A stretch of DNA of 64,000 bases from Ranitomeya imitator (lineage: Eukaryota), in NCBI RefSeq assembly GCF_032444005.1, contig NC_091291.1:16988001-17052000 (forward strand). Reading direction: 5' to 3'. Positions 5,430 to 60,962 of the stretch are shown piece by piece. The notes under the pieces are model-generated. The model saw only the letters and a program-made list of their open reading frames with translations, was not told where the DNA came from and ran no database searches. A program made the position numbers and the translations under genes. Position 1 is the stretch's first letter, and each line of letters opens with the position of its first letter.

Positions 5430-6376
5430 TTCAGGACTATGGGGAGTACAGCATACTGTATGGAGGACTATGGGGAGCACAGCATACTGTATGGAGGACA
5501 ATAGGCAGTACAGCATACTGTATGTAGGACTATGGGGAGTATAGTATACTGTGGAGGACTATGAGGATTACAGTATACTGTATGGAGGACTATGGGGAGT
5601 ACAGCATACTGTATGGAGGACTATGGGGAGTGTATTATATGATATGGAGGACTATGGGAAGTACAGTATACTGTATGGAGGACTATGGGGAGTACAGCAT
5701 ACTGTATGGAGGACTATGGGGAGTACAGCATACTGTATGGAGGACTATGGGGAGTACAGCATACTGTATGGAGGACTATGGGGAATACAGCATACTGTAT
5801 GGAGGACTATGGGAAGTATAGTATACTGTATGGAGGACTATGGGGAGTACAGTATACTGTATGGAGGACTATGGGGAGTACAGCATACTGTATGGAGGAC
5901 TATGGGGAGTACAGCATACTGTATGGAGGACTATGGGGAGTACAGCATACTGTATGGAGGACTATGGGGAGTACAGCATACTGTATGGAGGACTATGGGA
6001 AGTATAGTATACTGTATGGAGGACTATGGGGAGTACAGTATACTGTATGGATTACTATTGGGAGTGCAGTATACTGTATGGAGGACTATGGGAAGTACAG
6101 TATACTGTATGGATGACTATGGGGAGTGCAGTATACTATATGGATTACTATGGGGAGTACAGTATACTGCATGGTGAACTATTGGGAGTGAAGTATACTA
6201 TATGGAGGACTGTGGGGCGTGCAGCGTACTGTATGGAGGACTATTGGGAGTGCAGTATACTATATGGAGGACGATGGGGAGTACAGTATACTGTATGGAG
6301 GACTATGGTAAATACAGAATACTGTATGGATGACTATTTGGAATGCAGTATACTATATGGAGTATTATGGGGAGTC
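5430..6376 (+). repeat. 31-bp minisatellite (GGAGGACTATGGGGAGTACAGCATACTGTAT)n
   Basis: 31-bp period, about 30 copies, degenerating toward both ends. Confidence 0.95.
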
Positions 6377-8046
6377 ATGAAGAAAAACAAAAAGCCAGCT
6401 CACCAGGCAGCTTGTAGCAGGTGCACGGAACTTCCACGTTGATCCACGTAGTGTTGCATAGGAAGACGAAAAAAGCTTTGTTCCAGCTCCAAAATTTAAA
6501 ATTGAGTCCTTTATTAGTACATGATAAAAGCACAAGCTGAATAACTCTCCACAGCACAATAGGAAATGAGCTACGCGTTTCGATCTTTGCAGAGCTTTGT
6601 CAGAGCTACAACTGAATAAAACTAGTAATACTATATAGCCACCACCAGCCAATAGACAACAATCTCCAAATCACATGACAGGAAAGAATCCCACTGGCAA
6701 ATTACAATATAAAGCGAAGAAGGAAAAATATTGCACATAAGCATTAAAAGTTTGTATAAACACATTAGACACATAAAAAAACACATTAATTTCAAATACT
6801 CATGACAGAGACACTAATAATGATACATTAATTCATTGCTCTTATTGAGACCAACAGGGGAACGAGTGCTCAGGTGATAAATCCAAAATGCCTCACGCAT
6901 CAGTAGACAGCGTCTGGAATCACCTCCCCGCAATGGTTTGTTAACACGTTCTATCCCATAAGCACGGAAACTTTTAGTGCTGCCAGAATGCTGGGTAATG
7001 AAATGCCTGGAGGCTGCCAACACTGAACGAACAGACTCACCTGACTTCTCTATATCGTGTAAGTGTTCACTGATCCGTGTTTTTAACTTACGAGAGGTGC
7101 AGCCGACATAAGACAGGTATGACATATGCAGCCAACATATGACAGGTATGACATATGCAGCCAACATATGACAGGTATGACATATGCAGTCAATCTTATA
7201 AACCACTGACACAGTGTTACAATTAATATATTGCTTTATGTTGAAGTGCTTGGAAGCACTGGAGTCATCAAATGTCTTAGTGACTAATGCATGATCACAC
7301 GTCTTGCACCTATTACTGCCGCATTTATAGAAACCCGTATAATTCAACCAGGTTTTACTCTTATTTGTACTGGAGCGGAACATACTTGGTGAAACCCTAT
7401 CACCAATGGTCAGGGCTTTTCTTGATACTACATTAACTCCTGTATCCAAAATTTTAGCCAAACTAGCATCCTCATACAATATAGGTAAAAATTTGTTGAC
7501 TATATTCTTTATTTGATTAAACTGAGAACTAAACTGGAAACAGATGTATGGTTTCTTATTTACTTTGGCAGAAATAGGTACAGGAGATATTGATGTTTTT
7601 GGTATAATTAAATTGTCACGATCTTTTCGTGCGACAATTTTCTGTGCCCTGTTCAGCATCCAAAATGGATAATTGCGGCTTTTCAATTTACCGGATGCTA
7701 TATTTATTTCATTTTTTTAAATGTTCTCATTACTGCAATTTCGTTTGATTCTGGTAAATTCCCCGACGGGGATGGATTGAATAGTGTGCAGAGGGTGGCT
7801 ACTATCAGCATGGAGTATAGTATTGCCACCAAGAGATTTATGGTGAGTTCTTGTTTCTATCACCTGGTCAACATCACCAGCTAAACTCAGATCCAAAAAA
7901 TTGATCTGTTTCTGATCATATCTATATGTAAAGCGTAAATTATATTCATTTGAATTGAGATAACTAATGAAGTCAGGTATGGCAGATACATCGGCGGTCC
8001 AAATAATGAGTAAATCGTCGATGTATCTACCATACCAACCAATCTG
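6377..8046 (-). mobile_element. Penelope-like retroelement (PLE), 5'-truncated: RT C-terminus + GIY-YIG endonuclease + 3' terminal region
   Basis: 7717-8046 encodes WYGRYIDDLLIIW...INFLDL...HADSSHP (PLE RT). 6814-7686 encodes CxxxxCxxC...VVYKIDC...YVGCTSRKLKTRISEH...REAFWIYHL...GLN (PLE GIY-YIG). There is a frameshift between the two ORFs. Confidence 0.9.
6568..6610 (-). ncRNA. Degenerate minimal hammerhead ribozyme in the PLE 3' region
   Basis: Minus strand reads agct-CTGACAA-a-gctct(gcaa)agatc-GAAA-cgcg-TA-gctc. Stem II has one mismatch, and the core and stem I are imperfect. Confidence 0.55.
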
Positions 8047-8345
8047 AAAACACAATAGATTATCATTCAAAAATTATGGAACTTTTATCGGATGTGACAA
8101 CGTATACAGAACTTAAGGTTAATCCATCTAATGACTTTAAAGATAAAGCGGACAGAATAATAGAGGAAGGCTACAGACTTGGTATCCTTCAAAGCACTCA
8201 CTGTGCGAAACGGCCGTCGTCCTCTCTCCACTCCCGCACCCTCCTGTATACCTGATGTCCTAATGGATGTATGAACATGCTATAATTTTATTCCAATAAA
8301 GAGCACGAATACACAGCAAAAGAAGGGTGAGTGCCGCATATTTTC
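8047..8345 (+). mobile_element. Inverted PLE RT fragment fused to a PLE-type terminal repeat with a half hammerhead
   Basis: Plus frame reads NTIDYHSKIMELLSDVTTYTELKVNPSNDFKDKADRIIEEGYRLGIL (pre-RT region of PLE ORFs). It is followed by gcac-tcact-gtgc GAAA cggccg TC (8194-8218), AATAAA and GTGAGTGCCG. Confidence 0.65.
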
Positions 8346-8539
8346 TTTTTCTCTGTTTTTACAAAAATTCAGCTACACGCTAGAAGTGCAGAGCACCATA
8401 TACCCAGAGATTTCGTGACACCTGCAAATCGGTTTCTCCTAGGAGTCCAAGTCCATAAGAGTTTGTACTCCTCTGGTGCCGTCCCTTTCTCTATTTCTTT
8501 ACCGTTGGAACTACTATGTCTGTGAAATATGCGCATCAA

Positions 8540-11500
8540 CTAGAGAGGTCCGCCTCCTGATCTGGGATGGCGGGGAGAATAAAAGGAACCTCCCAATAAG
8601 ACGGGCGTGGTGCAGCAAAACCACGGGAAGCAACGCCGAGGAGGCAGAACCGGAAATCAACACGGCAGAGGGAGGTGAGTGGACCCCGGAGCATGGGATG
8701 GAGCAAGAGGACTCTCCCGGCCAGGACACGCAAGAACTTTACCCGTCGCAGATGATGAAACCGGACCTCCTGTGGAGAGAAGCGGAGGAGCTGACCCGAC
8801 AACTTACGCGGTTGCTGCTGGAAACCATGACCGGGTGGAGAGAGGCCTTGATCGGAAGTCTCGCCGGACGACCGCTGAATACCCTGACTGGTTCGGTGCC
8901 GAAAAGAAGATCCAGCTCTCCGGAAGCAGAGGTAAGGGGCACGACCCTGATGACCCCAACAGCGAAAGGCCCGACGGACACCGCTGACTCACCTCCACCG
9001 TGATATGCACCACCCGTCCAGGGGTACGAGGCCCTTGATGACACAACACTGTACCTAGAGGATATCCCGGCCAACAGCTCGACACCATCTTCTGGGCCCG
9101 ACGACACCTGGACGGACATGCCGCTGACTACCGCGGGACGACAGCATCTGGAGACAGCTGACATCTCCACTTATCCCCGCAAGTGAATCCCAGGCTAGCT
9201 CCCCAGAGCCCATGGTGTTTGCAGGGGGACCACGGGGGAGGACCTGATCGTGCTCCAGGGAGAGATCCCCATGATTACCTGGCAGGAGCACTGCAGGCGT
9301 CGGGAGGAGAGGGAGTGACAGGAATCTTTGGCCCGTGCAGCTGCATTTGAAGAGAAAAATCTGGCAGGGAAGGCCCGTGTACGTAAGATCCCATGGTCAG
9401 AGAGAGGACCACTGCAGCTGGGGGAAGTTGCAGTCTTTAACAAACAGCATGGCTGGGGCTTTATAAAAGAAGCTGGCATGATCAACGAAATCTTCGTCAA
9501 TTGCAGGGATGTGGAGTCACACCTAATTGAGAGACATCCTGACAGGGATCTGAATACTGGAGACCGTGTGACTTACACCCGTCACATTGGAGAAAAAGGA
9601 TGGTATGCACTAGACTGCAAAAAGCGTGTACCACCCTCAGCCCCTGTAAAAGTCACAGCCCAGGCCAGGCCAACGCCCAAAAGTGACCAGTCCACTCAGA
9701 CACCGGTGGTGCAACTAGCCAGCAGGCCCTGGTGTGCAGTACCTATGGAGAGGTATGATCCAGAGTGTTCCCGACCAGGGGGTGACAGTGCTTCTCAGCC
9801 CTGGAAAAGGAAGTAAAGAAACTGTTTTTCAAAATTTGAAAATGACTGTTGATTTAACCCTGTTGGAATATTCCTTAGTTGTTCCAGTTTGAAATTTTTA
9901 TTAAACCTGATCAGGTTTCCAGTTATGGAGTTCATTTGTTTAAAAAGACAATAGGATCATGAAGAATGAATGGTTCACAAACTGTACTGTAAATAGTTGG
10001 CACTTCCTTAGGTGCTTTCTACTGGTTTTATGTGGAACCCTTAAAGGGACAGTTCCAAAGTTGCCTTTAATTGTTGATTGTTTACATAGAGACCTGAAGC
10101 AAAACCCGTTGGTGTGGCAGAACCCTGGGCCTGGATAAGCCTTGTAGCCCTCCCCAGACCTACGTTGGGGGTTGATAACGGGTGCCTCGCTTCATTGCTG
10201 CTGTTCAAGAATGTGATTGTTGGACTTGAATATTGATTTAAATAATAAAATTGCACTACCTCAGAGTTGAGAAAAGTTAGAATTGATTTTGATGTGCTAG
10301 AGAGTTTTGTAGACTAAATTATGCACTGTTTGACCAGCTAAAGTATTGCACTTTGAATAAAATATATATATTTATGATGTAGAATACCTGAAAAGGTGGT
10401 TGTTAGCTATGAGAGTAGTTATGCACTTTAATTGTGAAGATAGTATACCCTTAGAGGGTAATTGCACTGTATTAAAGAGATAGTAAATGAAAATGCACTT
10501 TGAAGACTTAAAGATATAATACCCGTAAGGGTAGTTACCGTGCATAGCGTAGGAGTTGTTTACATTAGTGTAAATATGTTTGGTAACGTTAAAGAAATTA
10601 ATTCCTTCCGAATAGGGATGCCACAGTTACTATTAATTTGCTTTATACCTGTTATTAAGCATTCAAAAATGTTCTTCATGTCTTTTAACACCTGTTTGTT
10701 TATGTTTTCCTTTCCCAGTCTGGGAGTACTGAAGTTAACGGGGGGAGTGCAGCACCCGCAGGTAACCGGTTGCTGCAGTGATGTTGCCTTCCCTTCGGGG
10801 AGGGTGATGTCACACTTGGAGGCAAGGGGGGGTTGTTTCTATCAGGTACGGCACTTACATTCAACACATCTGAATCTAGGCCAGGAGGGGGAGCTCAGAA
10901 CCCGGATTCAGGGGAGCGTCCCTTAGCCATACTATATGCATCTTGGTTTGGAGGAGGAGTCAGTCAGTCTGAGAGAGGAGAGTAGAAGGACATCTGGAGG
11001 AAACGTGGGGGCCGAGCATCCAAGAGGGAGCTGCTACCCCTGGAAAGAGAAGCTGAAGGAGACTTGAATTGTGGAAGAGCTTAGAGGAAAGAAGTATAGA
11101 GGAGGAAAGGGCTCAGGAGGGGAACAGCGGAATGACACCCTCAGAGTCAGAGCGCAGAAGCCGGGTACCGGGAGCCCGAGGTCGTGTTGTTCTCCAGGAC
11201 GCGTTACAGAACCGGAGGGAAAAGCAATATATGTCAATTGCCCGTAGCAAGTCTGAGGTGAAGCAGTGACCGTGAGAGCTGGGTCATCTAAGAGATCCTA
11301 TAAGCAGGCTCAAACTGCCTATCGTACAGACATCTGTCTTAGAACAGGAGGAAGGGGACTTGCACTGAGCTTCAAGCAGCAGGGACCTAATTAACTACAT
11401 GGCGCCAGCAGGAAAGGCTTACAGACCTCACCTGGTAATGGGATCTCTTATTGCCTCCAAGCCAGCCGGACCACAGCTACCCTGTACTTGGTACCCTGGA

Positions 11501-25884: not shown

Positions 25885-28800
25885 ATGAGCTTCATCCTCA
25901 GCCTGATCCTGTTGTGCGCAGGAGCCACTACTTTCGCCCTTGGTAAGACCTTCTTCATCCTTTGCTCGATCTTATTCTTTTTTCCATTATTAACCAAACT
26001 TGAGGTTGCATTTGTTATACCCTTGTGTTTTTGGATTGTATCTTTTCTCCTATCTACCCCTGTAATAGTTGGGATCATCTCATGATAATTTTAAAACCTC
26101 TCTTAAGTCCCTCCATACACATTAGAGTAAGGTCGGGTGAACCTGCCGATATTAGTGGTTTGGCTGGAAGTCTAATACCGTTGGGGTCCAACCGACGTTC
26201 CCCCGACAGGTTGGCAGAGATAATGATCCAACATGTCCAATTTTGGATTGTCGATCCCTTAGTTCTTGGTGGGATAAGTTGTCGCCGGAGGAGACTCAGA
26301 ACGTAGAAAATATAGGAACGCTCCGGTGTATGAAAGAGTTAGAAGAGATGGCTGTCGGCCAAATGAATGGTTGAACCATTGTTTGTCCAACAACTCTCTC
26401 TCCCGAGTTCCCCATACCCTGGAACATTCAACTCGATTGAGCACCTGTGTTCTCTACGAGGCTCTCCTGGCAGCGACTTATCTCTTGGAGAGGATTGATC
26501 CATTGGAAATCCGATGTGTCGAATCCTTCTCTCCCTCAATATAATCAAATAACCACCAGACCCATCACACTGTTGGCCAATCTTAATGGATATAGGGGCC
26601 TTTAGAGTACCATAAGACCTTTCCTGTCCTTTCCAGACACTGGCGTACTCCAAGGACTATAGTGTGACCGTCCCAACATACAGCTCCACATACCTGTTAT
26701 CTAGACTGGGTCATACTTGAGCCCACCAGAAGAAATTATTCAGTAGGGCCCAACTTCTATCCATACGGAACAGGAGTGCGTAATTTGTATGATATTTATG
26801 ATTTTTTTCAAAATATTTTTGATTTCTAGATTACCAATGTGTCCTGATACCAGGAAACCTAAAACAGATCGATGCCGGTGCCGGACAAGTGTGGGGAGTT
26901 AATGATGCCGGACAGATCTTCAACTATGTCAATGGCATTTGGCAGCAAGTTCCCGGGCAGCTCATTCATGTGTCTGTCGGACCAGCTGGAGTCTGGGGGG
27001 TCAATAGCGACAGTACCGTCTTCAGATATCAGGACAACAGGTGGCAGCCTGTGACAGGTAATAAAAAAAAACCAAAATGCCAAATTTTTTTATAAGGTTT
27101 TATTGTCAGATCTAAGAAATAAATGGTGGTTGGCAATAGATGGTTATGGTCAAAACGTAGGAAAAATGACTCAACAGGTTGCTGATCATATAGGGACACA
27201 TAGCATAGAGGTCCTCACTGATCAAAATTATTTTCTCCATCAAAAATTGTTCTTACTTTTGGTTTAGTGAACAAATCAGATGGAGGGCAATTGAATTTTT
27301 TGGAATATTTTGCCATTTTACTCAAATTAGAGGATCGAATGGGCTTAAAAAAAGAAATTGAAATTCAATTTGACAGTCACCTGTTCCTTTGCCACAGTCC
27401 TTAAACTGGTCCTCCATCAGGCTCCAGCTGTTGTCACCTTGAGGTGACACCTTAGCTCTGTGCAGGGCCTTCCAGTGCTGAGTAGTCCTCCTCTGATGTC
27501 TTGGTGTGTTCTTCACCTGACTAAACCACGAGTAATGAATGTTGTGATGTTGGAAGTCAACTCAACACCGGAAACACCGACACAGAGTGAAAGTCCAGTA
27601 GAGAACTTCAGGCACTGAAGGACGACCCCGGACGGTGCTGTGAAAAGGACAGGAGGGGTCATTGGTGGCGAGATCGGTTTATTATGCATTGGGGGTAAGG
27701 AACATCATATATTGATGTGAATCAAATTTCCTGACCAAATTCGAGCAAACTGCTGAAATCAAATTGTTTGCGTTCCCATTTTTTTCATGAAGTGGCTTTT
27801 TTCCCCAATCAGCTGCAGCGTGATTTCAACTGGCGTCCAAGAACAAGTCAACAGAACTTTTGGGGGGTTACAAAAATGCTGAGGATGATCAAAACTCTGT
27901 CTTTCCGTCTTGGGGGCTTTTTTGTATTATGCATTACCCAATATATTATAACTCTTCTAATACACCTCCCCATTTATCTACAGGTTCCTTGAGGCAGGTG
28001 GATGCCGGTGGCAATCAGTACCTTGGTGGAGTGAATGCCCAGAACAACATCTTTTGCCTGATGCAGAATTGCACCGTCTCAAGGTCTTCGATCGTGACAT
28101 TCTATCCTCTTGAAGGCTCTCTGAAATATTACAGCTGTGGACCATATGGCTGTTGGGGTGTCAACAGCAATGAAAATGTCTTTTACCGTGAATTTGTGAC
28201 CCCCGATTCATGCCAGGGTGTTAAATGGCAGCCTCTGGATGGTAGTCTGAGCATGCTTGAGGTTGGACCTGATGGCTCCGTCTTTGGTGTCAACTCAGCT
28301 GGAGTTATATACAAGAGGTAAGGAAAGGATCACATGCTAGATAATGGGTTAACATCCTACCACTCCACGTGGAAGCGGAGATCTGGGAAGCTGTTTGGTA
28401 GGAAAGTATCACACAAAGCTTTCCTGTACAATGTGTTGTGTCCACCACACCTTTTGCAGAGATCCCCTTCTCCCACTCCATAATCAGGTCTATGACCCCC
28501 GTTGTCCCATCATTTGCTCAGTGGTTAGCACTGCTGCTTTGTAGTGTTTGGTTCCTGAGTTCAGAACCCACCAAGGAGAATATCTACAAGGAGTTTGTAT
28601 GGTCTCCCAGAGTTTGGTGGGTATCCTCCGAGTTTGGTGGGTTTCCTCCTAGTTTGGTGAGTTTCCTCTGAGTTTGGTGGGTTTCCTCCGAGAGTTTGGC
28701 GAGTTTCCTCTGGGTTTTGTGGGTTTCCTCCGAGTTTTGTAGGTTTCCTCCGAGTTTGGCGAGTTTCCTCTGAGTTTTGGGGGGTTTCCTCCGAGTTAGG

Positions 28801-40100: not shown

Positions 40101-40753
40101 AGCGAACACTAAGACAAAGCGGGGTGGCAGGAAAGGGAAGTCATGGGAACAGAGTACACGGGCAGAGGACAAAACACGGTATCAAGGGGTCAGCTGCTCT
40201 AGCCTGGGAGTATGAACTATCACTGACATTGGTCTGCAGGCCACAGCAAACTGAAATAGCAACACAGAAGCCAAAATGAGGCAAAGAAGGTAAACCTCCG
40301 CATGACCAGACCAGAGAGAAAATAACAAGAAACAAACCCCGGCCTGGATCATGACATCTGCAGCCTGGAACCCAGGTGTTGGTGAATGGAGGGGGCTGTG
40401 AAGCTGAGTAAGCCTCACACATGGTGGATGCTGGCTGTATTATACAGCCAAGATTTCTCTGTAAAAGCAGCGACCAGAGTTGCTGTTATAAAGGCACAGA
40501 TGATTGGCCTCGGGGAGACCAAAACATCAAACACCGCGGAGACACCATCACGTGTTTCTCAACGCAGTGATTCCAGAACACTGCCCCCATCCCTTATGGG
40601 AAATATGCAGATGCAAGTAAAGAAGCTGCGGAGACACCATCACGTGTTTCTCGACGCAAGCAGTGAATAGCCAGGCCTTTCCCCGGGAAGGAACAACCAC
40701 GGGAAGGGCAGCATCCTATGAAGGAAAGCCACCTATGCCAAGCATGGTATCCA

Positions 40754-40798
40754 TCCACAGACAGCTGTTTCGGGGTTTTTGCCCCTCATCAGTGTGGA
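40754..40798 (-). ncRNA. Type I minimal hammerhead ribozyme, copy 1
   Basis: tccaca-CTGATGA-gggg(caaaaa)cccc-GAAA-cagctg-TC^-tgtgga. Intact core, 6-bp stem I, 4-bp stem II, palindromic mini stem III. Confidence 0.92.
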
Positions 40799-41106
40799 GT
40801 AGGAATCTGGCTATTAGGAGCAGTGCCTAGTAAAAAGGCTATAAAGGCACAGATGATTGGCCTCGGGGAGACCAAAACATCAAACACCGCGGAGACACCA
40901 TCACGTGTTTCTCAACGCAGTGATTCCAGAACACTGCCCCCATCCCTTATGGGAAATATGCAGATGCAAGTAAAGAAGCTGCGGAGACACCATCACGTGT
41001 TTCTCGACGCAAGCAGTGAATAGCCAGGCCTTTCCCCGGGAAGGAACAACCACGGGAAGGGCAGCATCCTATGAAGGAAAGCCACCTATGCCAAGCATGG
41101 TATCCA

Positions 41107-41151
41107 TCCACAGACAGCTGTTTCGGGGTTTTTGCCCCTCATCAGTGTGGA
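41107..41151 (-). ncRNA. Type I minimal hammerhead ribozyme, copy 2
   Basis: Same sequence as copy 1, 353 bp away. Confidence 0.92.
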
Positions 41152-42263
41152 GTAGGAATCTGGCTATTAGGAGCTGTTAGCTCATTAAATCCCACTGTCA
41201 AAGTCTGACTCCAGTATTCGAGTGGAGGAAACACATTAGCGCACTGTTTTGGGAACCCTTTACTTCCCCCATGATGTAATCGCAAGGTTTCGATGGGTTG
41301 ACAATGCAGCTGGGGGGCATGGATGCCATCTTCATATTTCTCGTAAGCACAACAACACCCTAGGCTTCATCGGAGACCTTCACTTTACCTATATACTGCA
41401 ATACTCCATGTTTTCCTGCTTTTCAGCACAAAACTACAACTTGTCTCACAAAAAAAACAAAAAAACAACAAACCCTCATAGAGCGATGTTGGAAAAAAAC
41501 GTTATGGCTACTGAAAAGAAAAAATTGGCCATGACGGGAAGTTGGCTAGACGTGGTCGTCTTTGGATTACACTGTGCGGTTTATCTTTATATTACATATT
41601 GACAGAGAAGATTCACTTTTCTGGAGAAAACCACAAAAGCAAGGTGTGAGGTTACTTGGAAAGGTGTGGGTTTACCTACTTTAAATATTTATCTGATAAG
41701 GCTGTAACAAAGCGAAAACGCCCTAGGATTAGTGAATGTTACGAGAGCCGTGGAATGTTTACGGAGGTGCCCGGGGGCTGTATACTACGGCGCTGAGTCC
41801 GGTCGGGTGCTACATATTCAGAATGGTCGACCCCTTGAAATGCCTTTAATTTGACCTGTGAGTCTCTGGATCGAGTGCTAATGAATTGTGCCGCTTCTGT
41901 AGTTTTTGGTGCCATTCCCATGTAAGAATTTGGACGGTGCGGCACGTGGGGTGGTGGACCTGGGATCCTTTAAAGTAGAGATTTGGAGATTTGTGCTTTG
42001 GATGGGGCATTTTAATAGGCGGTTACTTTGCAGACAAGATGACTTTATTAGGCACTGGGTAGAAGAAAATAGAGCGAATTAACACCATGTCGCTCTCCTA
42101 GGCAGGACAGGCTGAGGTTAGTAGGCACCTGAGGTCTTACAGCAGCACTGATGGAGGAAAAGAGCTCCAGGTACATCCCGGCTGTCTGTGGTCCAATCAA
42201 ATATTTCTATTGACCTTGTAACAAACTCCTCAAGATAATTTGAGTTAAGAAATATTCAATTCA

Positions 42264-42437
42264 TGTGCAACTATCAAGTGTACTGTACCATCCTGTGCAA
42301 ACTGCAACCATCCAGTGTATTGTACCATCCTGTGCAAACTGCAACCATCCAGTGTACTGTACCATCCTGTGCAAACTGCAATCATCCAGTATACTGTACC
42401 ATTCTGTGCAAACTGCAATCATCCAGTGTACTGTACC
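42264..42437 (+). repeat. 37-bp tandem repeat
   Basis: GTGCAAACTGCAACCATCCAGTGTACTGTACCATCCT, about 4.5 copies. Confidence 0.9.
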
Positions 42438-43864
42438 ATGACCACGGACATCTCCAAACACCATGAAGACCAAGGAGACCTCCAAACACCATGAAGGCCA
42501 AGGAGACCTCCAAAAAACACCAGGAAGACCAAGGAGACCTCCAAACAACACCAAGGAGATCTCCAAACAACACCATGAAGACCAATGAGACCTCCAAATA
42601 ACACCATAAAGACCAAGGAGACCTCCAAACAACACCAAGGAGATCTCCAAACAACACTATGAAGACCAAGGACATCTCCAAACACCATGAAGACTAAGGA
42701 GATCTCCAAACAAGCCAAGGACAAAGTTGTTGAGAAATACAAGTCAGGTTTGGGTTATAAAAAATATCCCAATCTCTGATGATCCCCTGGAGCACCTTCA
42801 AATCCATTATTATCAAATGGAAAGAACATGGTACCACAACAAACCTGCCAAGAGAGGGCCGCCCACCAAAACTATCAGCCTGGGCAAGGAGGACATTAAT
42901 CACAGAGGCAGCACAGAGACCAAAGGTAACACTGAAGGAGCTGAAGAGTTCTCAGGTAGAGACTGGAGAATCTGTTCATACAACCACAATAAGCCATACA
43001 CTCCATAGATTTGTCCTTTAAGGAAGAATGGGCAGAAAAAAATCCTTTACTTACACACAAATTGTAAGGCTCATTTTGAGTTTACAAAAATACATTTGGG
43101 AGACTCCCCAAATGTATGGAGGAAGGTGCTGTGGTCAAATGATACCAAAATTGAACTTTTTGGCCACCAAGATAAATGCTATGTCTTACACCAAACCAAC
43201 ACAACTCATCACCTCAAGAACACCATCCCCACAGTGAAACATGGTGGTGGCAACATCATGATGGGATGTTTTTCAGTAGCAGGGATAGGGAAAATGGTCA
43301 GAGTTGAGGAGAAAAAGGATGGTGTGAAAAGTAAAACCTGTTTCAGTCTGTCAGTGATTTGAGACTAGGACGGAGGTTCACCTTCCAATAAGACAATGAA
43401 CCAAAGCTAAAGCAACATTTAAGTTTTTTAAGGGGAAGCGTGTGAATGTTTTGGAGAGGCCTATTCACAGCCCAGACCTTAATCCAATTGAGAATCTGTG
43501 GTCTGACTTGAAGATCGCTGTCCACCAGAGAAAACCATCAAACTTGAAGTAGTTGGAGCATGAGCAATGGTCAAAAATGCCAGTGGCAAGATGTGGAAAG
43601 CTCATAAAGTGACATGCAGCTGCAAATGCCGTAAAAGGAGGCTCTACAAAGTACTGACTTTAGGGGGGGTGAATAGTTATGCACACTGAAGTTCTCAGTT
43701 TTTTGTCCTATTTGTTGTTTGCTTTGCAATAAAAAGAAAAATAAATGTTCACAGCTGTCGGTATGTTCTGTACATGAACGGTTGCAGACCCTTAAAAAAA
43801 AAACGTGAAATTCTAGGTTGTGAGGTCGCAAATGTCAAGGGTGTGAATACTTTGCAAACCACTG
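42438..43864 (+). mobile_element. Tc1/mariner transposon with decayed transposase and intact right end
   Basis: Pseudo-ORF at about 42687-43657 (MKTKEISKQAKDKVVEKYKSGLGYKK / IPWSTFKSIIIKWKEHGTTTNLPREGRPPKL / KVLWSNDTKIELFG / TVKHGGGNIM / SPDLNPIENLW) with frameshifts. It ends ...AACCACTG|TA at 43864-43866. Confidence 0.9.
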
Positions 43865-46900: not shown

Positions 46901-49900
46901 GGTCAGCTCAGCTCCTGTCTCCTCCTTTGACTGTTCTGCTTATGAAAACAATCTCCTGCAGCAGCTTTCCCCTAGAATTGGAGACACAGGAGCTGAGCTG
47001 ACTCATCACTGCCATCATCTGTACTCCAGCTGATTCCAGGAAAACAGGCTGGGAAAAACAAACTGAAGTTTAGAAGCCATTTATATGTGTCTATTTACAA
47101 GAAAAAATATAAATCATTAAGCAATTTGCAAAGTTTCATAACTTATTTTGCTGAAGGAGTGAAAGAATGGCTGCTTTCTTTCCTCAGTACAGGGGGATCA
47201 CTGCCTTCCATGCGGCTTCAGCCACCACTGTCATTTACTTCCTGCTTACAGCCTCTTTTTATAGTCAACAGTACTACAGTGCCCTCTAATGGTGGTAACT
47301 TGTTAATGCAGGCATATATTGGTGCAAAAAATTCCATTCCATTTATCTTTGATTTTGCTTCTATAGGTGCTCTGAAACAAATAGACGCAGGTGGAGAGAT
47401 ATTCGTGTCTGGAGTTAATGGATTGGATTGGATTTACTGCCTGAACCAAGTGGACACACTTTCTAAAGCTACAGTGCTGCCCTTTGTTCAACTAGATGGG
47501 GCTCTCAAATACTACTCTTGTGGCCTGAATGGCTGCTGGGGTGTGAACAGCATCAATAACATCTATTACCGCTATGACGTGCAGCCCAGTGCCTGCAGAG
47601 GAAGTCGTTGGCAGCAGGTAGAAGGCAGTTTGGTCATGGTGGAGGTCGCCACCGATGGTTCTGTATACGGCGTGAACTCTGGAGGAATGGTATATAAAAG
47701 GTACAAAAATTAGAATAATTAACTATAAATTCCATTATCGGACATTCTGCTCTTAGGTCAAAATTTTGTAGCTATGAATTTATGATGTATCTGGGAATAT
47801 TATTTGGGAAAATTATGGATACCTGCAGCCACCACTAGGGGGAGCTCACTGTATATAGAATTCAACTGCTCAATGAGAATCTGTAACAGTGGGCTCCCCC
47901 TAGTGGTGGCTGCTATGACAGCATCCAACAAGCAAGGGAATGAGTTTACTGCTGCTTACAGGGACCACGTCATCACTAGGAAGCCCAAACTGCCCAAGCT
48001 TCAACTGGCGACATCCGCCGCACACAGGGGTGGATTAAGGGTAGCCAGGGCCCCGGGCTGTTCACACACTGTGGGCCCCCCCGGTCATGTGACGGGGGTC
48101 ATGTGACGGGGGTCATGTGACGGGGGTCATGATATACCCGAACCAGATTATTCCAGAAAAATGGCCGGGCCCTACTCTACTGTAACCTATTAAATATTTG
48201 TTAAAATCTGCAATACAATTTAGGTATATCTTGACCAATAATATCACATACAAGGAACAAATACCACCGCACCATGACCAGACCACAAATTACAACCACA
48301 GTGATCGAATAATATCACATACAAGGAACAAATATCACTGCACCATTTCCAGACCACATATTACCACCACATAGTGACTGAGTACCACAATACTGATCAG
48401 TAATAAAAAAACAAAAAACACAATACTATCACCATAAGTGCCAGTATTCACAGGAGATCTGTACTTAGTATGCAGTGTCTGTGTAGAGGTAATACAGTGA
48501 TCACTGGTGGTATTATACACAGGAGCTCTGTATATAGTATACAGTGTATAGTGTCAGTGTATAGGCAACACTGACTCACCAGTGACGTCTCTAGGTGAAG
48601 TCCTTCATCTTTCATCCAGCACAGACCGCCATCATTCCTTCCAGCCAGGACTCGTTTCTGCAGGAAATAACACAGTAATCTCGAGCTCCACTTGCAGAAC
48701 ACATTACTTAATTTTTCACAACTTCTACATTACACCACATGAAGATAAAAAGGCGATATAGTGTCACTCTGCACAATAACAGGACCGCCCCCCCCCCCAT
48801 TTAAAACAGTATACTCAAAAAATAAAATAAATACATCACTGCAGTAATAATATCCCTTAATTAGCCCCTATGGTAATAATATTCCCCACCCTGGCCCCGT
48901 TTATCTCATTCCTCGCTCCAGCCATATGTTCTCCCATCCTGCACTCATGAGTATCCATTCTACCCCATATGATCTCCCCATCCTGCCCCATCTGTCTCCA
49001 TCGTATCCATTCTGCCCCATGATCCAATCCTGCCCCATGTCTCCAATCATGCCCCGTGTCTACATTCTGCCCATGCCTCCAGTCCTGCCCCCAGTGTGTC
49101 CAGCATATTACCACCAGTGTGTCCAGCAATCTGGCCCAGTGTCTCCAGCATTGCCCCAGTGTGTCCAGCAATAATCTGCCCCAGTGTATCCAGCATTGCC
49201 CCAGTGTGTCCAGCAATCATCTGCCCCAGTGTCTCCAGCATTGCCCCAGTGTGTCCAGCAATCATCTGCCCCAGTGTATCCAGCATTACCCCAGTGTGTC
49301 CAGCAATCATCTGCCCCAGTGTCTCCAGCAATCTGCCCCAGTGTCTCCAGCAATCTGCCCCAGTGTCTCCAGCAATCTGCCCCAGTGTCTCCAGCAATCT
49401 GCCCCCAGTGTCTCCAGCAATCTGCCCCCAGTGTCTCCAGCAATCTGCCCCAGTGTGTCCTCCAGCAATCTGCCCCCAGTGTGTCCTCCAGCAATCTGCC
49501 CCACTGTCTCCAGCAATCTGCCCCACTGTCTCCAGCAATCTGCCCCACTGTCTCCAGCAATCTGCCCCACTGTCTCCAGCATTGCCCCCAGTGTGTCCTC
49601 CAGCATTGCCCCCCAGTGTGTCCTCCAGCAATCTGGCCCACTGTCTCCAGCATTGCCCCACTGTCTCCAGCATTGCCCCACTGTCTCCAACATTGCCCCC
49701 AGTGTGTCCTCCAATCTGCCCCAGTGTCTCCAGCATTGCCCCCAGTGTGTCCTCCAATCTGCCACAGTGTCTCCAGCATTGCCCCCCCCAGTGTGTCCTC
49801 CAATCTGCCTCACTGTCTCCACCAATCTGCCCCACTGTCTCCAGCAATCTGCCCCACTGTCTGCAGCAATCTGCCCCACTGTCTCCAGCAATCTGCCCCA

Positions 49901-55252: not shown

Positions 55253-58200
55253 TGTTGTGAATTCTGTTGTCGAACTCCCTCCTGTGGTCGTGAATGGTAC
55301 TTCGGCGAGTTCTGTCTATGGGCTCCCTCTGGTGGCTATGAGTGAAGCTGCTGCTTCTGAGGTTCCTTACACAGGTGACGTGGTTTATCCTTTGGTTGGA
55401 TTCTCTATTTAACTCCTCTCAGATCGTTACTCCATGCCAGCTGTCAATGTTTTTGCATTCGTTCAGTTCGCTCCTGGATCTCTCTGGTGACCTGCCTTCT
55501 CCTGCAGAAGCTAAGTTCCTTATAGTCTTATTTTGTTCTCTGTTTTCTTGTCCAGCTGGTTTTCATGATTTTGTCTTGCTAGCTGGAAGCTCTGGGATGC
55601 AGAGTGGCCCCTCCGCACCGTGAGTCGGTGCGGAGGTCTTTTTTGCACACTCTGTGTGGTCTTTTGTAGGTTTTTGTGCTGATCGCAAAGTTACCTTTCC
55701 TATCCTCTGTCTATTTAGTAAGTCTGGCCTCCCTTTGCTGAAACCTGTTTCATTTCTGCGTTTGTGACTTTCATCTTTACTCACAGTCAATATATGTGGG
55801 GGGCTTCCTTTACCTTTGGGGAATTTCTCTGAGGCAAGGTAGGCTTTATTTTCTATCTCTAGGGCTAGATAGTTCTTAGGCTGTGACGAGGCGCCTAGGT
55901 CTGGTCAGGAGCGCTCCACGGCTATTTCTAGTGTGTGTGATAGGATTAGGGCTTGCGGTCAGCAGAGCTCCCACATCCCAGAGCTCGTCCTGTATGAGGT
56001 TTAATTATCAGGTCATTCTGGGTGCTCCTAACCACCAGGTCATAACAGTACAGCTGGCCCAAAGTATTAATGCATCTCAATAGAGGGATAAGAGAACTTC
56101 TGAGACCATTTTTTTTTCTTTGCACTGTGTTTTGTCTTTCTTTTCCCCTAGACCTTTGGGTGGTTCAGGACACAGGTGTAGGTATGGACATTCAAGGTCT
56201 GTCCTCTTGTGTGGATCATCTCACTGCAAGGATACAAAACATTCAAGATTTTGTGGTTCAGAATCCTATGTTGTAGCCTAGAATTCCTATTCCTGACTTA
56301 TTTTCTGGGGATAGATCTAGGTTCTTGAATTTCAAAAATAATTGTAAACTGTTTCTAGCTTTGAAACCCCGCTCCTCTGGTGACCCCGTTCAACAGGTAA
56401 AAATCATTATTTCTTTGTTACGTGGCGACCCTCAAGACTGGGCATTTTCCCTTGCGCCAGGAGATCCTGCATTGCGTGATGTTGATGCGTTTTTTCTGGC
56501 GCTTGGATTGCTTTATGATGAACCAAATTCAGTGGATCAGGCAGAGAAAATCTTGCTGGCTTTGTGTCAGGGTCAGGATGAAGCGGAGGTGTACTGTCAG
56601 AAGTTTAGAAAGTGGTCTGTGCTTACTCAGTGGAATGAATGTGCCCTGGCGGCAATTTTCAGAAACGGTCTTTCTGAAGCCCTTAAGGATGTCATGGTGG
56701 GATTTCCCACACCTGCTGGTCTGAATGAGTCTATGTCTTTGGCCATTCAGATCGATCGGCGCATGCGTGAGCGCAAAGCTGTGCACCATTTGGCGATATT
56801 CTCTGAGCATATGCCTGAGCCTATGCAGTGTGATAGGACTTTTACCAGAGCTGAACGGCAAGAACACAGACGTCGGAATGGGCTGTGTTTTTACTGTGGT
56901 GAATCCACTCATGCTATCTCCGATTGTCCTAAGCTCACTAAGCGGTTCGCTAGGGCTGCCACCATTGGTACGGTACAGTCGAAATTTCTTTTGTCCGTTA
57001 CTCTGATTTGCTCTCTGTCGTCCTATTCTGTAATGACATTTGTGGATTCAGGCGCTGCCCTGAATTTGATGGACTTGGAGTTTGCCAGGCGCTGTGTTTT
57101 TTTCTTGGAGCCCTTGCAGTATCCTATTCCATTGAGAGGAATTGATGCTACGCCTTTGGCCAAGAATAAGCCTCAGTACTGGACTCAATTGACCATGTGC
57201 ATGGCTCCTGCACATCAGGAGGATATCCGCTTTCTGGTGTTGCATAATCTGCATGATGTGGTCGTTTTGGGGTTGCCATGGCTACAGGTCCATAATCCAG
57301 TGTTGGATTGGAAATCTATGTCTGTGTCCAGCTGGGGTTGTCAGGGGGTACATGGTGATGTTCCATTGCTGTCAATTTTGCCATCCACTCCTTCTGAAGT
57401 CCCTGAGTTTTTATCAGATTACCGGGATGTATTTGAAGAGCCCAAATCTGGTGCCCTACCTCCTCATAGGGATTGCGACTGTGCTATTAATTTGATTCCT
57501 GGTAGTAAGTTTCCTAAAGGCCGTCTATTTAATTTATCTGTGCCAGAGCACGCCGCTATGCGAAGTTATATAAAGGAATCCTTGGAGAAGGGTCATATTC
57601 GTCCGTCGTCGTCACCATTGGGAGCAAGGTTCTTTTTTGTGGCCAAGAAGGTATTGATTACCGCCTTCTTAATAAGATCACAGTCAAATTTCAGTATCCT
57701 TTGCCGCTACTGTCTGATTTATTTGCTCGGATTAAGGGGGCTAGTTGGTTCACCAAGATAGATCTTCGTGGTGCGTATAATCTTGTGCGAATTAAACAGG
57801 GTGATGAATGGAAAACGGCATTTAATACGCCCGAGGGCCATTTTGAGTACCTGGTTATGCCATTCGGGCTTTCTAATGCTTCATCTGTGTTTCAGTCCTT
57901 TATGCATGACATCTTCCGAGAGTACCTGGATAGATTCATGATTGTATATTTGGATGGCATTTTGGTCTTTTCGGATGATTGGGAATCTCATGTGAAGCAG
58001 GTCAGAATGGTGTTCCAGGTCCTTCGTGCGAATTCCTTGTTTGTGAAGGGGTCAAAGTGTCTCTTTGGAGTTCAGAAGGTTTCATTTTTGGGTTTCATTT
58101 TTTCCCCTTCTACTATCGAGATGGACCCTGTTAAAGTTCAGGCCATTTACGATTGGACTCAGCCGACATCTGTGAAGAGCTTACAGAAGTTCCTGGGCTT

Positions 58201-60962
58201 TGCTAATTTTTATCGTCGCTTCATCGCTAATTTTTCCAGTATTGCTAAACCGTTGACTGATTTGACCAAGAAAGGTGCTGATGTGGTCAATTGGTCCTCT
58301 GCGGCTGTAGAGGCTTTTCAGGAGTTGAAGCGTCGTTTTGCTTCTGCCCCTGTGTTGTGCCAGCCAGATGTTTCGCTCCCTTTTCAGGTTGAGGTTGATG
58401 CTTCTGAAATTGGAGCAGGAGCTGTTTTGTCGCAAAGAAGTTCTGATGGCTCGGTGATGAAACCCTGTGCCTTCTTTTCTAGAAAATTCTCGCCTGCTGA
58501 GCGCAATTATGATGTGGGCAATCGGGAGTTGTTGGCCATGAAGTGGGCATTCGAGGAGTGGCGACATTGGCTTGCAGGAGCTAAACATCGTGTGGTGGTC
58601 TTGACGGATCACAAAAATTTGACTTATCTCGAGTCTGCCAAACGGTTTAATCCTAGACAGGCTCGATGGTCGCTCTTTTTCTCCCGTTTTGATTTTGTGG
58701 TTTCATACCTTCCGGGATCTAAGAATGTGAAGGCTGACGCCCTGTCAAGGAGTTTTGTGCCTGACTCTCCGGGTGTTCCGGAGCCGGCGGGTATTCTTAA
58801 AGAAGGGGTAATTTTGTCTGCCATTTCCCTTGATTTGCGGCGTGTGCTGCAAAAGTTTCAGACTGATAGACCTGACCGTTGTCCTACGGAGAAACTGTTT
58901 GTCCCTGATAGATGGACTAGTAGAGTTATCTCTGAGATTCATTGTTCTGTGTTGGCTGGTCATCCTGGAATCTTTGGTACCAGAGATTTGGTGGCTAGAT
59001 CCTTTTGGTGGCCTTCTTTGTCACGGGATGTGCGTTCTTTTGTGCAGTCCTGTGGGACTTGTGCTCGGGCTAAGCCCTGCTGTTCTCGTGCCAGTGGGTT
59101 GCTTTTGCCCTTGCCGATCCCGAAGAGGCCCTGGACGCATATCTCCATGGATTTTATTTCTGATCTCCCTGTTTCTCAAAAGATGTCGGTCATTTGGGTG
59201 GTTTGTGATCGCTTCTCTAAGATGGTCCATTTGGTACCGTTGTCTAAATTGCCTTCCTCCTCTGATTTGGTGCCATTGTTTTTCAAGCATGTGGTTCGTT
59301 TGCATGGCATTCCAGAGAACATCGTCTCGGACAGAGGTTCCCAGTTTGTTTTGAGGTTTTGGCGGTCCTTTTGCGCTAAGATGGGCATTGATTTGTCTTT
59401 TTCTTCGGCTTTCCATCCTCAGACTAATGGCCAAACCGAACGAACTAATCAGACTTTGGAGACATATCTGAGATGCTTTGTTCTGCTGATCAGGATGATT
59501 GGGTGTCCTTCTTGCCTTTGGCTGAGTTCGCCCTTAATAATCGGGCCAGCTCGGCTACTTTAGTTTCTCCTTTTTTCTGTAATTCTGGTTTCCATCCTCG
59601 TTTCTCTTCAGGGCAGGTTGAACCTTCGGACTGTCTTGGTGTGGATGCGGTGGTGGACAGGTTGCAGCAGATTTGGACTCATGTGGTGGACAATTTGACA
59701 TTGTCCCAGGAGAAGGCTCAACGCTTCACTAACCGCCGGCGTTGTGTTGGTCCCCGACTTCGTGTTGGGGATTTGGTTTGGTTGTCATCTCGTCACGTTC
59801 CTATGAAGGTTTCCTCTCCTAAGTTTAAGCCTCGTTTCATTGGGCCATACAAGATTTCTGAAGTTCTTAATCCTGTGTCATTTCGTTTGGACCTTCCAGC
59901 TTCTTTTGCCATCCATAATGTGTTCCATAGGTAGCTGTTGCGGAGATACGTGGCTCCTATGGTTCCCTCCATTGATCCTCCTGCCCCGGTGTTGGTCGAG
60001 GGGGAGTTGGAGTATGTGGTGGAGAAGATTTTGGATTCTCGTATTTCGAGACGGAAACTCCAGTACCTGGTCAAGTGGAAGGGTTATGGTCAGGAAGATA
60101 ATTCCTGGGTTTTTGCCTCTGATGTTCATGCTGCCGATCTGGTTCGTGCCTTTCATTTGGCTCATCCTGATTGGCCTGGGGGCTCTGGTGAGGGTTCGGT
60201 GACCCCTCCTCAAGGTGGGGGGTACTGTTGTGAATTCTGTTGTCGAACTCCCTCCTGTGGTCGTGAATGGTACTTCGGCGAGTTCTGTCTATGGGCTCCC
60301 TCTGGTGGCTATGAGTGAAGCTGCTGCTTCTGAGGTTCCTTACACAGGTGACGTGGTTTATCCTTTGGTTGGACTCTCTATTTAACTCCTCTCAGATCGT
60401 TACTCCATGCCAGCTGTCAATGTTTTTGCATTCGTTCAGTTCGCTCCTGGATCTCTCTGGTGACCTGCCTTCTCCTGCAGAAGCTAAGTTCCTTATAGTC
60501 TTATTTTGTTCTCTGTTTTCTTGTCCAGCTGGTTTTCATGATTTGTCTTGCTAGCTGGAAGCTCTGGGATGCAGAGTGGCCCCTCCGCACCGTGAGTCGG
60601 TGCGGAGGTCTTTTTTGCACACTCTGTGTGGTCTTTTGTAGGTTTTTGTGCTGATCGCAAAGTTACCTTTCCTATCCTCTGTCTATTTAGTAAGTCTGGC
60701 CTCCCTTTGCTGAAACCTGTTTCATTTCTGCGTTTGTGACTTTCATCTTTACTCACAGTCAATATATGTGGGGGGCTTCCTTTACCTTTCATAGGCTGTG
60801 ACGAGGCGCCTAGGTCTGGTCAGGAGCGCTCCACGGCTATTTCTAGTGTGTGTGATAGGATTAGGGCTTGCGGTCAGCAGAGCTCCCACATCCCAGAGCT
60901 CGTCCTGTATGAGGTTTAATTATCAGGTCATTCTGGGTGCTCCTAACCACCAGGTCATAACA
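55253..60962 (+). mobile_element. Near full-length Ty3/gypsy chromovirus (sushi-like) LTR retrotransposon, disabled
   Basis: 5' LTR 55253-56047, 3' LTR 60226-60962 (TG..CA), PPT 60212-60225, 6-bp TSD AAAGGC (55247-55252 / 60963-60968). Domain order is gag-PR-RT-RH-IN-chromodomain. Confidence 0.97.
56184..60225 (+). pseudogene. Gag-pol polyprotein pseudogene
   Basis: CFYCGESTHAISDC knuckle, FVDSGAA protease, RT MPFGL...YLDG, RNase H EVDASEIG...TDHKNL, integrase HHCC and SMDFI...SDRGSQF...GQTER, chromodomain EYVVEKILDSR...YLVKWKGYG. Lesions: TAG 56274, deletion/frameshift about 57650, frameshift about 59480, TAG 59932. Confidence 0.93.

What the first reader, a model, noticed from the sequence alone, without database searches (positions are those of the whole stretch)
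40487..41174. Young retrozyme dimer: 353-nt monomers bounded by two perfect self-cleaving hammerheads
Seen: two apparently identical 353-bp units, each with an intact CUGAUGA/GAAA/GUC core, a 6-bp stem I, a 4-bp stem II and a palindromic ACAGCUGU stem III. GCTGTTA is duplicated at the flanks and there is no ORF. Predicted cleavage at 41113^41112 and 40760^40759 releases exactly one monomer (41112-40760). The monomer also carries two copies of a GAGACAC-catcac-GTGTTTC hairpin. Known: newt satellite 2 and metazoan non-LTR retrozymes yield monomeric/circular RNAs, cleave as hammerhead dimers, and are thought to be mobilised by Penelope-like RTs. Inference: an active anuran circular-RNA retrozyme family, with PLE helpers like the one at 6377-8046. 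The class is known, but this family may be undescribed.
Basis: partly seen in the sequence, partly recalled or inferred. Interest (0 to 1): 0.85.

Follow-up and report, generated by a model that had tools for sequence, protein, structure and literature searches.

The report
Frog hammerhead retrozyme dimer insertion
This is a real, recently inserted, protein-free mobile element made of 1.95 copies of a 353-base unit, each with a complete hammerhead self-cleaving RNA motif; it is one ordinary copy of a very abundant family of an already described class (animal non-LTR retrozymes).

Summary
Window 40487-41174 is an exact 1.95-copy tandem of a 353-bp unit. On the minus strand each unit carries a complete type I hammerhead: CUGAUGA, a 4-bp helix II with a CAAAAA loop, GAAA, a 2-bp helix III with the palindromic loop AGCU, GUC, and an extended helix I. 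The predicted cuts at 41113^41112 and 40760^40759 release a 353-nt monomer. A 7-bp duplication (GCTGTTA) brackets a 684-bp insert (40489-41172).

The motif fits a widespread animal hammerhead type, with compensatory changes in 13 of 17 pairs across 17 sequences. Helix III is too weak alone; two copies are predicted to form a double hammerhead, as in newt satellite 2.

Contig depth in a DNA run implies a very abundant family. Runs that may be RNA also hold it, but neither a circle nor a cut end could be shown.

The insert ends are not at the cut sites. The 3' end lies in a hairpin loop, and two other copies in public contigs end at the same place. This resembles the internal start of reverse transcription described for Penelope-like elements.

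The nearby "PLE helper" is only a decayed endonuclease fragment. The class is known in amphibians, and this scan had already followed up the same 353-bp family elsewhere in this genome. Verdict: a new member of a known kind, of low to moderate interest.

The parts
40489..41172 (-). The inserted element: 684 bp, 1.94 units of the 353-bp retrozyme. In monomer coordinates counted from the cut site it runs from position 294 through one full unit to position 271.
40482..40488 (.). Target-site duplication GCTGTTA, left copy. Its last 2 nt also fit the monomer, giving a 2-nt microhomology.
41173..41179 (.). Target-site duplication GCTGTTA, right copy. Its first 2 nt also fit the monomer.
41101..41159 (-). 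Hammerhead 1: type I with extended helix I, cleavage after C41113 (41113^41112).
40748..40806 (-). Hammerhead 2, identical to hammerhead 1: cleavage after C40760 (40760^40759).
40760..41112 (-). Predicted 353-nt monomer released by double cleavage. As a circle it folds at -126.2 kcal/mol with 67% of bases paired (z = -3.9 against shuffles).
40820..40841 (-). The 22 nt (monomer 272-293) present only at the unit junction. It shows that the copy was templated by a multimer or a circle, not made by duplicating a shorter insert. It lies in and beside the hairpin GUGCCU/AGGCAC.
40981..41011 (-). Internal 31-nt repeat, copy a (holds CACGTG). The same repeat in unit 2 lies at 40628-40658.
40889..40919 (-). 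Internal 31-nt repeat, copy b. The same repeat in unit 2 lies at 40536-40566.

Best explanation
Window 40489-41172 is one recent insertion of a very abundant, non-coding hammerhead retroelement of a frog genome, that is, a metazoan non-LTR retrozyme.

Shown:
- Two identical units, each with a complete type I hammerhead on the minus strand.
- A 7-bp target duplication.
- A junction segment that proves the copy was made from a template longer than one unit.

Inferred mechanism:
1. Transcripts of the minus strand that carry two or more units pair their two weak helices III (ACAGCUGU with ACAGCUGU) into a double hammerhead.
2. They cut after GUC and release 353-nt monomers with 5'-OH and 2',3'-cyclic phosphate ends.
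3. A host tRNA ligase can close these monomers into highly paired circles.
4. New DNA copies are made by the reverse transcriptase/endonuclease of a Penelope-like element. It nicks the target and starts cDNA synthesis at an internal site of the RNA, around monomer position 271, in the loop of a hairpin.
5. It then copies a circle or an uncut multimer for 1.94 rounds, which gives the partial tandem.

Whether this particular locus is itself transcribed is unknown. It is more likely a product than a source.
For: - Exact 1.95-unit repeat.
- Hammerhead core and stems occur twice, against 0 expected by chance. They are the best Rfam match in a clan-wide comparison: Hammerhead_HH9, E = 0.0022, full model length, conserved UAC bulge and CAAAAA loop.
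- Across this element and 16 unrelated metagenome contigs that share only the core, 13 of 17 pairs show compensatory changes. The covariation score is 0.419 against 0.207 in shuffles (0 of 500 reach it) and at most 0.109 when the partners are slid. An unselected U in the helix I internal loop is invariant.
- Helix III has probability about 2e-4 in a single motif. Two motifs have as their minimum-energy structure a double hammerhead with an 8-bp helix III (-43.9 against 2 x -19.2 kcal/mol). Newt and axolotl hammerheads likewise work as dimers (PMC7229834; PMC6155905).
- A 7-bp duplication lies directly at both ends.
- The 22-nt junction segment is covered as deeply as the rest of the family in public contigs, so the dimer was templated.
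- Summed word depth in DNA run X1 is 3e5-1.3e6 over the element against about 6.8 in the unique flanks, with 7539 contigs laid. Many very small runs of several species labels hold 79% of its words.
- Two other contigs in X15 carry different flanks at 40488 and 40842, the same element 3' end.
- Penelope-like reverse transcriptase starts internally in a stem-loop and yields partial tandems (PMC11167929).
- Retrozymes are proposed to be non-autonomous partners of Penelope-like elements (10.64898/2026.07.22.740005).
- A remnant resembling a Penelope-type GIY-YIG endonuclease lies in the same window.
Against: - No Rfam family reaches its gathering score (24.3 bits against 52).
- In the whole 684-nt transcript the minimum-energy fold has no double hammerhead. 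Forcing one costs +3.3 kcal/mol and disturbs helix I.
- In vitro, 8 of 9 Xenopus retrozyme dimers did not cleave (10.64898/2026.07.22.740005).
- Expression is not shown. The runs called 'RNA?' are guesses. Their depth over the element relative to a neighbouring repeat (40300-40373) is about the same as in DNA (about 84-127 against about 158).
- No circle junction or cut end could be read from contigs.
- No contig spans the whole locus, so the unit number rests on the assembly.
- The resident Penelope-like fragment shares no sequence with the element.
- The evidence for a fixed 3' end is two contigs.
Confidence: 0.85

Rival explanations
1. The template was not a circle but an uncut multimeric transcript of a longer genomic array, and the hammerhead plays no part in making new copies. 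Self-cleavage would be dispensable or protein-assisted, as for the anole Penelope-like element.
For: - Neither insert end lies at a cut site.
- The double hammerhead is not favoured in the full transcript.
- Hammerhead mutants of the anole element still insert in vitro, and uncut RNA is the main substrate (PMC11167929).
- 8 of 9 Xenopus dimers do not cleave (10.64898/2026.07.22.740005).
Against: - The hammerhead is fully intact in both units and conserved, with covariation, across unrelated elements. This argues for selection on cleavage.
- Axolotl retrozymes do form circles in vivo (PMC7229834).
- A 1.94-round product fits a circle equally well.
Confidence: 0.35
2. It is plain satellite DNA. 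A single unit was doubled at the DNA level by slippage or unequal crossing-over, with no RNA step.
For: Tandem repeats can expand at the DNA level. Multimers of Xenopus retrozymes cluster near centromeres and telomeres (10.64898/2026.07.22.740005).
Against: - A 7-bp duplication brackets the whole 684 bp.
- The unit junction holds 22 nt that are absent from both ends. Doubling a 331-bp insert could not create them.
- The locus is a dispersed, isolated copy among genes and other transposons.
Confidence: 0.05
3. The dimer is an assembly artefact: a mis-joined or wrongly counted repeat.
For: The family is extremely abundant, and no public contig spans the locus. Exact repeats are where assemblers err.
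Against: - Both flank junctions are clean, and unique flanks have single-copy depth (about 6.8) in X1.
- The duplication matches at both ends.
- The 1.94-unit layout is what Penelope-type insertion gives (PMC11167929).
Confidence: 0.05

Closest known systems
Metazoan non-LTR retrozymes (Cervera and de la Pena 2020, PMC7229834; vertebrate survey by Li, Clavereau and Pollet 2026, bioRxiv 10.64898/2026.07.22.740005)
   Same: - A non-coding tandem unit within the 170-450 bp range, with a type I hammerhead in every unit.
- No LTRs, and a target duplication longer than 4 bp.
- A highly paired predicted circle.
- Very high copy number, alongside Penelope-like elements.
- It would pass the survey's own rule for an 'active' element: two consecutive units with complete hammerheads.
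   Different: - Outside the hammerhead it does not look like the two axolotl units printed in the paper's supplement (compared by eye). The equal length to axolotl Rtz353 is a coincidence.
- GC is 51%, slightly above the 'below 50%' given for the class.
- RNA circles and cleavage are not shown for this family.
Newt satellite 2 / axolotl HHR_Amex1 hammerhead
   Same: - A unit of about 330-350 bp.
- An extended type I hammerhead with a CAAAAA-type loop II.
- A very weak helix III closed by a palindromic tetraloop, so that two motifs must pair to cut (PMC7229834; PMC6155905).
   Different: - Helix III has 2 bp plus an AGCU loop, rather than 1 bp plus CAUG.
- Helix II is GGGG/CCCC.
- The host is a frog, not a salamander.
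- An snRNA-type internal promoter, as in the newt (cited in PMC2220036), is not evident. There are only two 7-of-8 octamer-like matches, about what chance gives.
Rfam Hammerhead_HH9 (RF02275), the conserved intronic hammerhead
   Same: Best-scoring Rfam model over its full length, with the same UAC bulge in helix I, the same CAAAAA loop II and the same core.
   Different: - It scores 24.3 bits against a gathering score of 52.
- Helix III is much shorter.
- It is repeated and mobile, not a single conserved locus.
Penelope-like element pseudo-LTRs and their insertion signature (Frangieh et al. 2024, PMC11167929)
   Same: - A partial-tandem insert.
- A 3' end at a defined internal site in a stem-loop rather than at an RNA end or at the ribozyme cut.
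- A target duplication, and a hammerhead in the repeated part.
   Different: - No ORF.
- A canonical rather than a minimal hammerhead.
- The 3' end lies 271 nt after the cut, not about 85-92 nt.
- No sequence similarity to the one Penelope-like fragment in this window.

Membership tests
Metazoan non-LTR retrozyme | Tandem units of about 170-450 bp, each with a type I hammerhead | tested here: met
   Unit of 353 bp in 1.95 copies, with two complete hammerheads
Metazoan non-LTR retrozyme | Hammerhead with an intact catalytic core (CUGANGA / GAAA / RUH) and helices I-III | tested here: met
   Core read directly. Helices I and II are supported by covariation in 17 sequences. Helix III forms only between two motifs.
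Metazoan non-LTR retrozyme | Non-coding, without LTRs | tested here: met
   The longest ORF is 101 aa and has no Pfam match. There are no terminal repeats other than the units themselves. PBS and PPT motifs were not searched for.
Metazoan non-LTR retrozyme | Target-site duplication longer than 4 bp, when one is present | tested here: met
   7-bp GCTGTTA at both ends
Metazoan non-LTR retrozyme | Expressed as monomer-size linear and circular RNA | tested here: inconclusive
   Contigs of runs guessed to be RNA cover the unit, and one shows a run of A>G changes that is absent from the DNA run. However, depth tracks DNA copy number, and contigs cannot show ends or circles.
Metazoan non-LTR retrozyme | Self-cleavage of the transcript | not testable with these tools
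   Only thermodynamic predictions are available. The double hammerhead is favoured for isolated motifs but not in the whole 684-nt RNA.
Metazoan non-LTR retrozyme | Host genome also holds Penelope-like elements | tested here: met
   The ORF at 6814-7686 (minus strand) is nearest to eukaryotic GIY-YIG / HTH_animal clusters (score 0.96) and has a YVG...R...EH motif. It is a decayed fragment only.
Rfam Hammerhead_HH9 (RF02275) | Score at or above the curated gathering threshold | tested here: not met
   24.3 bits against 52. The element is filed as HH9-like in shape, not as a member.
Penelope-like element (autonomous) | Single ORF with reverse transcriptase and GIY-YIG endonuclease between pseudo-LTRs | tested here: not met
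   There is no such ORF inside or next to the insert, and the duplication directly flanks the 684 non-coding bp.

The most novel reading that the evidence does not exclude
Insertions of this protein-free retrozyme family may share a fixed 3' end inside a hairpin loop 82 nt upstream of the ribozyme cut. The ends would then never be the ribozyme-made ends.

If so, the recently described internal initiation of reverse transcription by Penelope-like enzymes also operates on retrozyme RNA. Genomic copies would then record the enzyme's start site. That would give a direct, testable mechanistic link between retrozymes and one Penelope-like lineage.

In addition, RNAs of both polarities may form double strands that are edited A-to-I.
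Probability: 0.35. Interest if true: 0.5.

Novelty: new member of a known kind. Interest (0 to 1): 0.3.

Why it matters
The copy adds nothing new in kind. Amphibian hammerhead repeats have been known since 1987, and frog retrozymes were surveyed in 2026. Its value is as a clean specimen: it has exact units, an intact duplication, and termini that can be read to the base.

Such young copies, collected genome-wide, could show where reverse transcription starts and stops on retrozyme RNA. They could also show which Penelope-like lineage does the copying. The papers name both as open questions.

Tried and rejected
- Rfam at gathering thresholds over the whole window gave nothing. Only the permissive search of the region gave HH9.
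- A scan of viral contigs for the core gave 0.
- The metagenome scan gave 17 contigs that share only the 33-nt core and no other part of the unit. They show no tandem repeat of 100 bp or more and no long ORF, apart from two in L010. They served only as a comparative set for the ribozyme.
- Looking for the monomer elsewhere in the window gave only short chance matches, and none in the Penelope-like fragment.
- A search for a paralogous empty site within the window found none.
- A loose scan for any other hammerhead in the 64 kb found none. A permissive Rfam search of 4500-9500 found no ribozyme.
- Octamer-type promoter motifs gave two 7-of-8 matches against about 0.3 expected, which is not convincing. 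The bacterial promoter/terminator scan is irrelevant here.
- The hairpin at the insert ends is not better than shuffles (z = -1.2).
- All runs offered were contigs, so no RNA ends, no strand and no circle junction could be read. No empty-site joint appeared in X1.
- The papers PMC2933863 and PMC308520 are not held.
- The scan's own index gave nothing when searched by sequence.

Full report
**What is there**

Tandem Repeats Finder reports one array at 40487-41174 with period 353, 1.9 copies, 100% matches and no indels. A direct comparison shows the second unit is identical to the first for 335 nt and then runs into the flank. The ribozyme lies on the minus strand.

Read, the first hammerhead has these parts:
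- helix I, 5' strand UCCACA (41151-41146);
- CUGAUGA (41145-41139);
- helix II GGGG/CCCC closed by CAAAAA;
- GAAA (41124-41121);
- helix III of only A-U and C-G closed by AGCU, together the palindrome ACAGCUGU;
- GUC (41115-41113);
- helix I, 3' strand UGUGGA.

The 43-nt motif occurs twice, against 0 expected in shuffles. Neither a strict scan nor a loose one finds another hammerhead in the 64 kb.

**Is it a hammerhead?**

No Rfam family reaches its gathering score. A permissive search of the region gives Hammerhead_HH9 for both copies: full model length, 24.3 bits against a threshold of 52, E = 0.0022. The UAC bulge of helix I and the CAAAAA loop II match the consensus, and the loss of score lies in the very short helix III.

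An independent test came from a metagenome scan. The pattern fixed the core and helix III but left helix II and everything outside free. It returned 17 contigs that share nothing else with the frog unit. I aligned 16 of them with the frog motif (alignment A1). On that alignment the proposed structure is paired in 81.7% of cells, against 69% in shuffles and 26-38% when the partners are slid. Thirteen of 17 pairs show changes on both sides. The covariation score is 0.419 against 0.207, and 0 of 500 shuffles reach it. A U in the internal loop of helix I, which the search did not select, is invariant. This fits the loop-loop contact of natural type I hammerheads (inference from PMC7229834).

**Monomer or dimer?**

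Folded alone, the 67-nt motif forms helices I and II with probability above 0.93. Helix III forms with probability about 2e-4. Two motifs together have a double hammerhead with an 8-bp helix III as their minimum-energy structure, at -43.9 against 2 x -19.2 kcal/mol. This is the behaviour reported for newt and axolotl hammerheads, which cut poorly as single motifs and well as dimers (PMC7229834; PMC6155905).

A caution applies. In the whole 684-nt transcript the minimum-energy fold (-258.6 kcal/mol) lacks the double hammerhead, and forcing it costs +3.3 kcal/mol. Only 1 of 9 Xenopus retrozyme dimers cleaved in vitro (10.64898/2026.07.22.740005). So self-cleavage is plausible but not assured.

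**The monomer**

- The released 353-nt RNA, closed into a circle, folds at -126.2 kcal/mol with 67% of bases paired. Shuffles give -106.7 +/- 5.0, so z = -3.9.
- It holds a 31-nt internal repeat, 30 of 31 bases identical, 92 nt apart, each copy with CACGTG and a weak hairpin.
- GC is 51%, against 45% for the window.
- The longest ORF is 101 aa, on the strand opposite the ribozyme, and has no Pfam match.

**The insertion**

GCTGTTA stands at 40482-40488 and at 41173-41179. The insert proper is therefore 40489-41172, 684 bp, with 2 nt of ambiguity (microhomology) at each end. A 7-nt match in a fixed register has a chance of about 6e-5.

In monomer coordinates counted from the cut site, the insert begins at position 294, only 13 nt before hammerhead 1. 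It runs through one whole unit and ends at position 271.

The 22 nt of positions 272-293 (window 40820-40841) occur only at the junction of the two units. Public contigs cover this segment as deeply as the rest of the unit, so it belongs to the family. A shorter insert doubled later could not contain it. The DNA was therefore copied from a template longer than one unit, either a circle or a multimer.

Zero differences over about 2 x 331 bp, together with the intact duplication, make the copy young. With a rate of 1-2e-9 per site per year (my assumption), the 95% upper bound is roughly 2-4.5 million years.

**Where the ends lie**

Neither end is at a ribozyme cut. The 3' end lies in the loop, and the 5' end just after the 3' arm, of a local hairpin GUGCCU/AGGCAC. 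That hairpin is the local minimum-energy fold at -9.1 kcal/mol, but it is no better than shuffles (z = -1.2).

In run X15, two contigs with other flanking sequences end at 40488 and at 40842. Both correspond to the same element 3' end, within a base or two (table 7). Only five long loose ends were shown for that run, so two at one position are unlikely under random ends. I estimate about 1e-3, but the sample is tiny.

Frangieh et al. showed that a Penelope-like enzyme starts reverse transcription at internal sites in a stem-loop of its RNA. The start does not depend on homology to the target, hammerhead cleavage is not required in vitro, and genomic copies end at those start sites (PMC11167929). 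The layout here has the same signature: a partial tandem, a defined internal 3' end, and a duplication. This is the best evidence in the window that a Penelope-type enzyme made this copy. It remains an inference.

**Abundance and expression**

The monomer's words are held by runs of several studies and several species labels. These include runs of only 7-24 million letters of contigs.

I laid four runs on 40300-41400:
- DNA run X1 gave 7539 contigs. Summed word depth was 3e5-1.3e6 over the element and about 6.8 in the unique flanks. The tool warns that this is not a copy number, so I take it only as 'tens of thousands of units or more'.
- Runs X15 and X17, guessed to be RNA, show depths of 500-6000 over the element and none on the unique flanks. 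However, the ratio to a neighbouring repeat (40300-40373) is about 84-127 in these runs and about 158 in DNA. Specific high expression is therefore not shown.
- One X17 contig (depth 13) carries 9 A>G changes between 41066 and 41102, out of 13 differences. None is seen in X1, except one contig at 41075. A contig present in both X15 and X17 carries T>C at 40717, 40719 and 40734.

Such one-type runs look like A-to-I hyper-editing of RNAs of both polarities. They would argue that the family is transcribed and forms double strands, but they rest on single contigs.

Both RNA-like runs also hold a contig in which only the hammerhead core (41112-41147) sits in a quite different sequence. The same ribozyme thus serves at least one other element.

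**The 'helper'**

At 6814-7686 on the minus strand there is a 290-aa ORF with a CxxxxCxxC...YVGxTxRxLxxRxxEH pattern. It has no Pfam hit, even at E = 10. In the protein atlas it lies nearest to eukaryotic GIY-YIG and HTH_animal clusters (score 0.96, 197 shared features). It is thus a Penelope-type endonuclease remnant. There is no reverse-transcriptase ORF beside it, no hammerhead within 4500-9500 and no similarity to the retrozyme. It shows that such elements live in this genome, but not that it helps.

**Comparison with what is known**

The class is described. Newt satellite 2 dates from 1987. Metazoan non-LTR retrozymes with circles in coral, mussel and axolotl were reported in PMC7229834. 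A 2026 survey covers 31 vertebrates, including seven amphibians and 57 Xenopus families, and argues that retrozymes derive from Penelope pseudo-LTRs (10.64898/2026.07.22.740005).

The two axolotl units printed in the supplement differ from this one, and the shared length of 353 nt is a coincidence. I found no paper on hammerheads of poison frogs.

The scan's own notes call this genome a poison frog and list hundreds of hammerhead notes. Among them is a followed-up insertion of the same 353-bp family in a TRIM exon. These are leads only, but they agree with the abundance I measured.

**Verdict**

This is a genuine, young, well-preserved copy of an abundant frog retrozyme family. It is a new member of a known kind. 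The only point beyond the ordinary is the position of its ends. If that position is general, it ties retrozyme insertion to the internal-initiation mechanism of Penelope-like enzymes.

Noticed in passing
window 27860-28321 (+) and 47087-47713 (+): Two ORFs with strong Tectonin-domain matches (E = 5.6e-39 and 4.7e-42) cover the same part of the profile. They are probably exons of two tandem paralogues of a tectonin / fish-egg-lectin-like gene. The retrozyme lies between them on the opposite strand.
   Followed up: no
window 56325-59563 (+): An LTR-retrotransposon gag-pol: weak gag and aspartyl protease matches, then RVT_1, RNase H and integrase, in two overlapping ORFs of 478 and 620 aa.
   Followed up: no
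window 6814-7686 (-): A 290-aa ORF resembling the GIY-YIG endonuclease part of a Penelope-like element. It has no Pfam hit and no reverse-transcriptase part beside it. Immediately downstream on that strand, at about 5900-6380, lies a tandem repeat of about 37 bp.
   Followed up: partly
window 9328-9816 (+): An ORF with a cold-shock domain (E = 1e-8) inside what another note of the scan calls an LTR retroelement.
   Followed up: no
window 40300-40373: The flank next to the insert is itself a repeat. Its summed word depth is about 4000 in DNA run X1, against about 6.8 for the unique flank.
   Followed up: no
window 41112-41147 (-), contigs of runs X15 and X17: Both runs hold a contig in which only the hammerhead core (2 bp of helix I through the cut site) is embedded in unrelated sequence on both sides. 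A second element or gene therefore carries the same ribozyme (table 7).
   Followed up: no
window 41066-41102 and 40717-40734, contigs of X17 and X15: Runs of A>G changes (plus strand) and of T>C changes appear in contigs of the RNA-like runs and are absent from the DNA run. The pattern looks like A-to-I hyper-editing of both polarities (table 3).
   Followed up: partly
L001-L017 (metagenome contigs ERZ1740055, ERZ1740069, Ga0126343, OFEN01, OFES01): Low-GC (33-49%) contigs, mostly without long ORFs, carry type I hammerheads with the very same helix III (ACAGCUGU) and CAAAAA loop II as the frog element, but with other helices I and II. They are presumably host DNA of animals in those samples.
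   Followed up: partly
window 42266-42721: Two adjacent minisatellites, with periods of 37 bp and of 31/53/84 bp, lie 1.1 kb from the insert.
   Followed up: no
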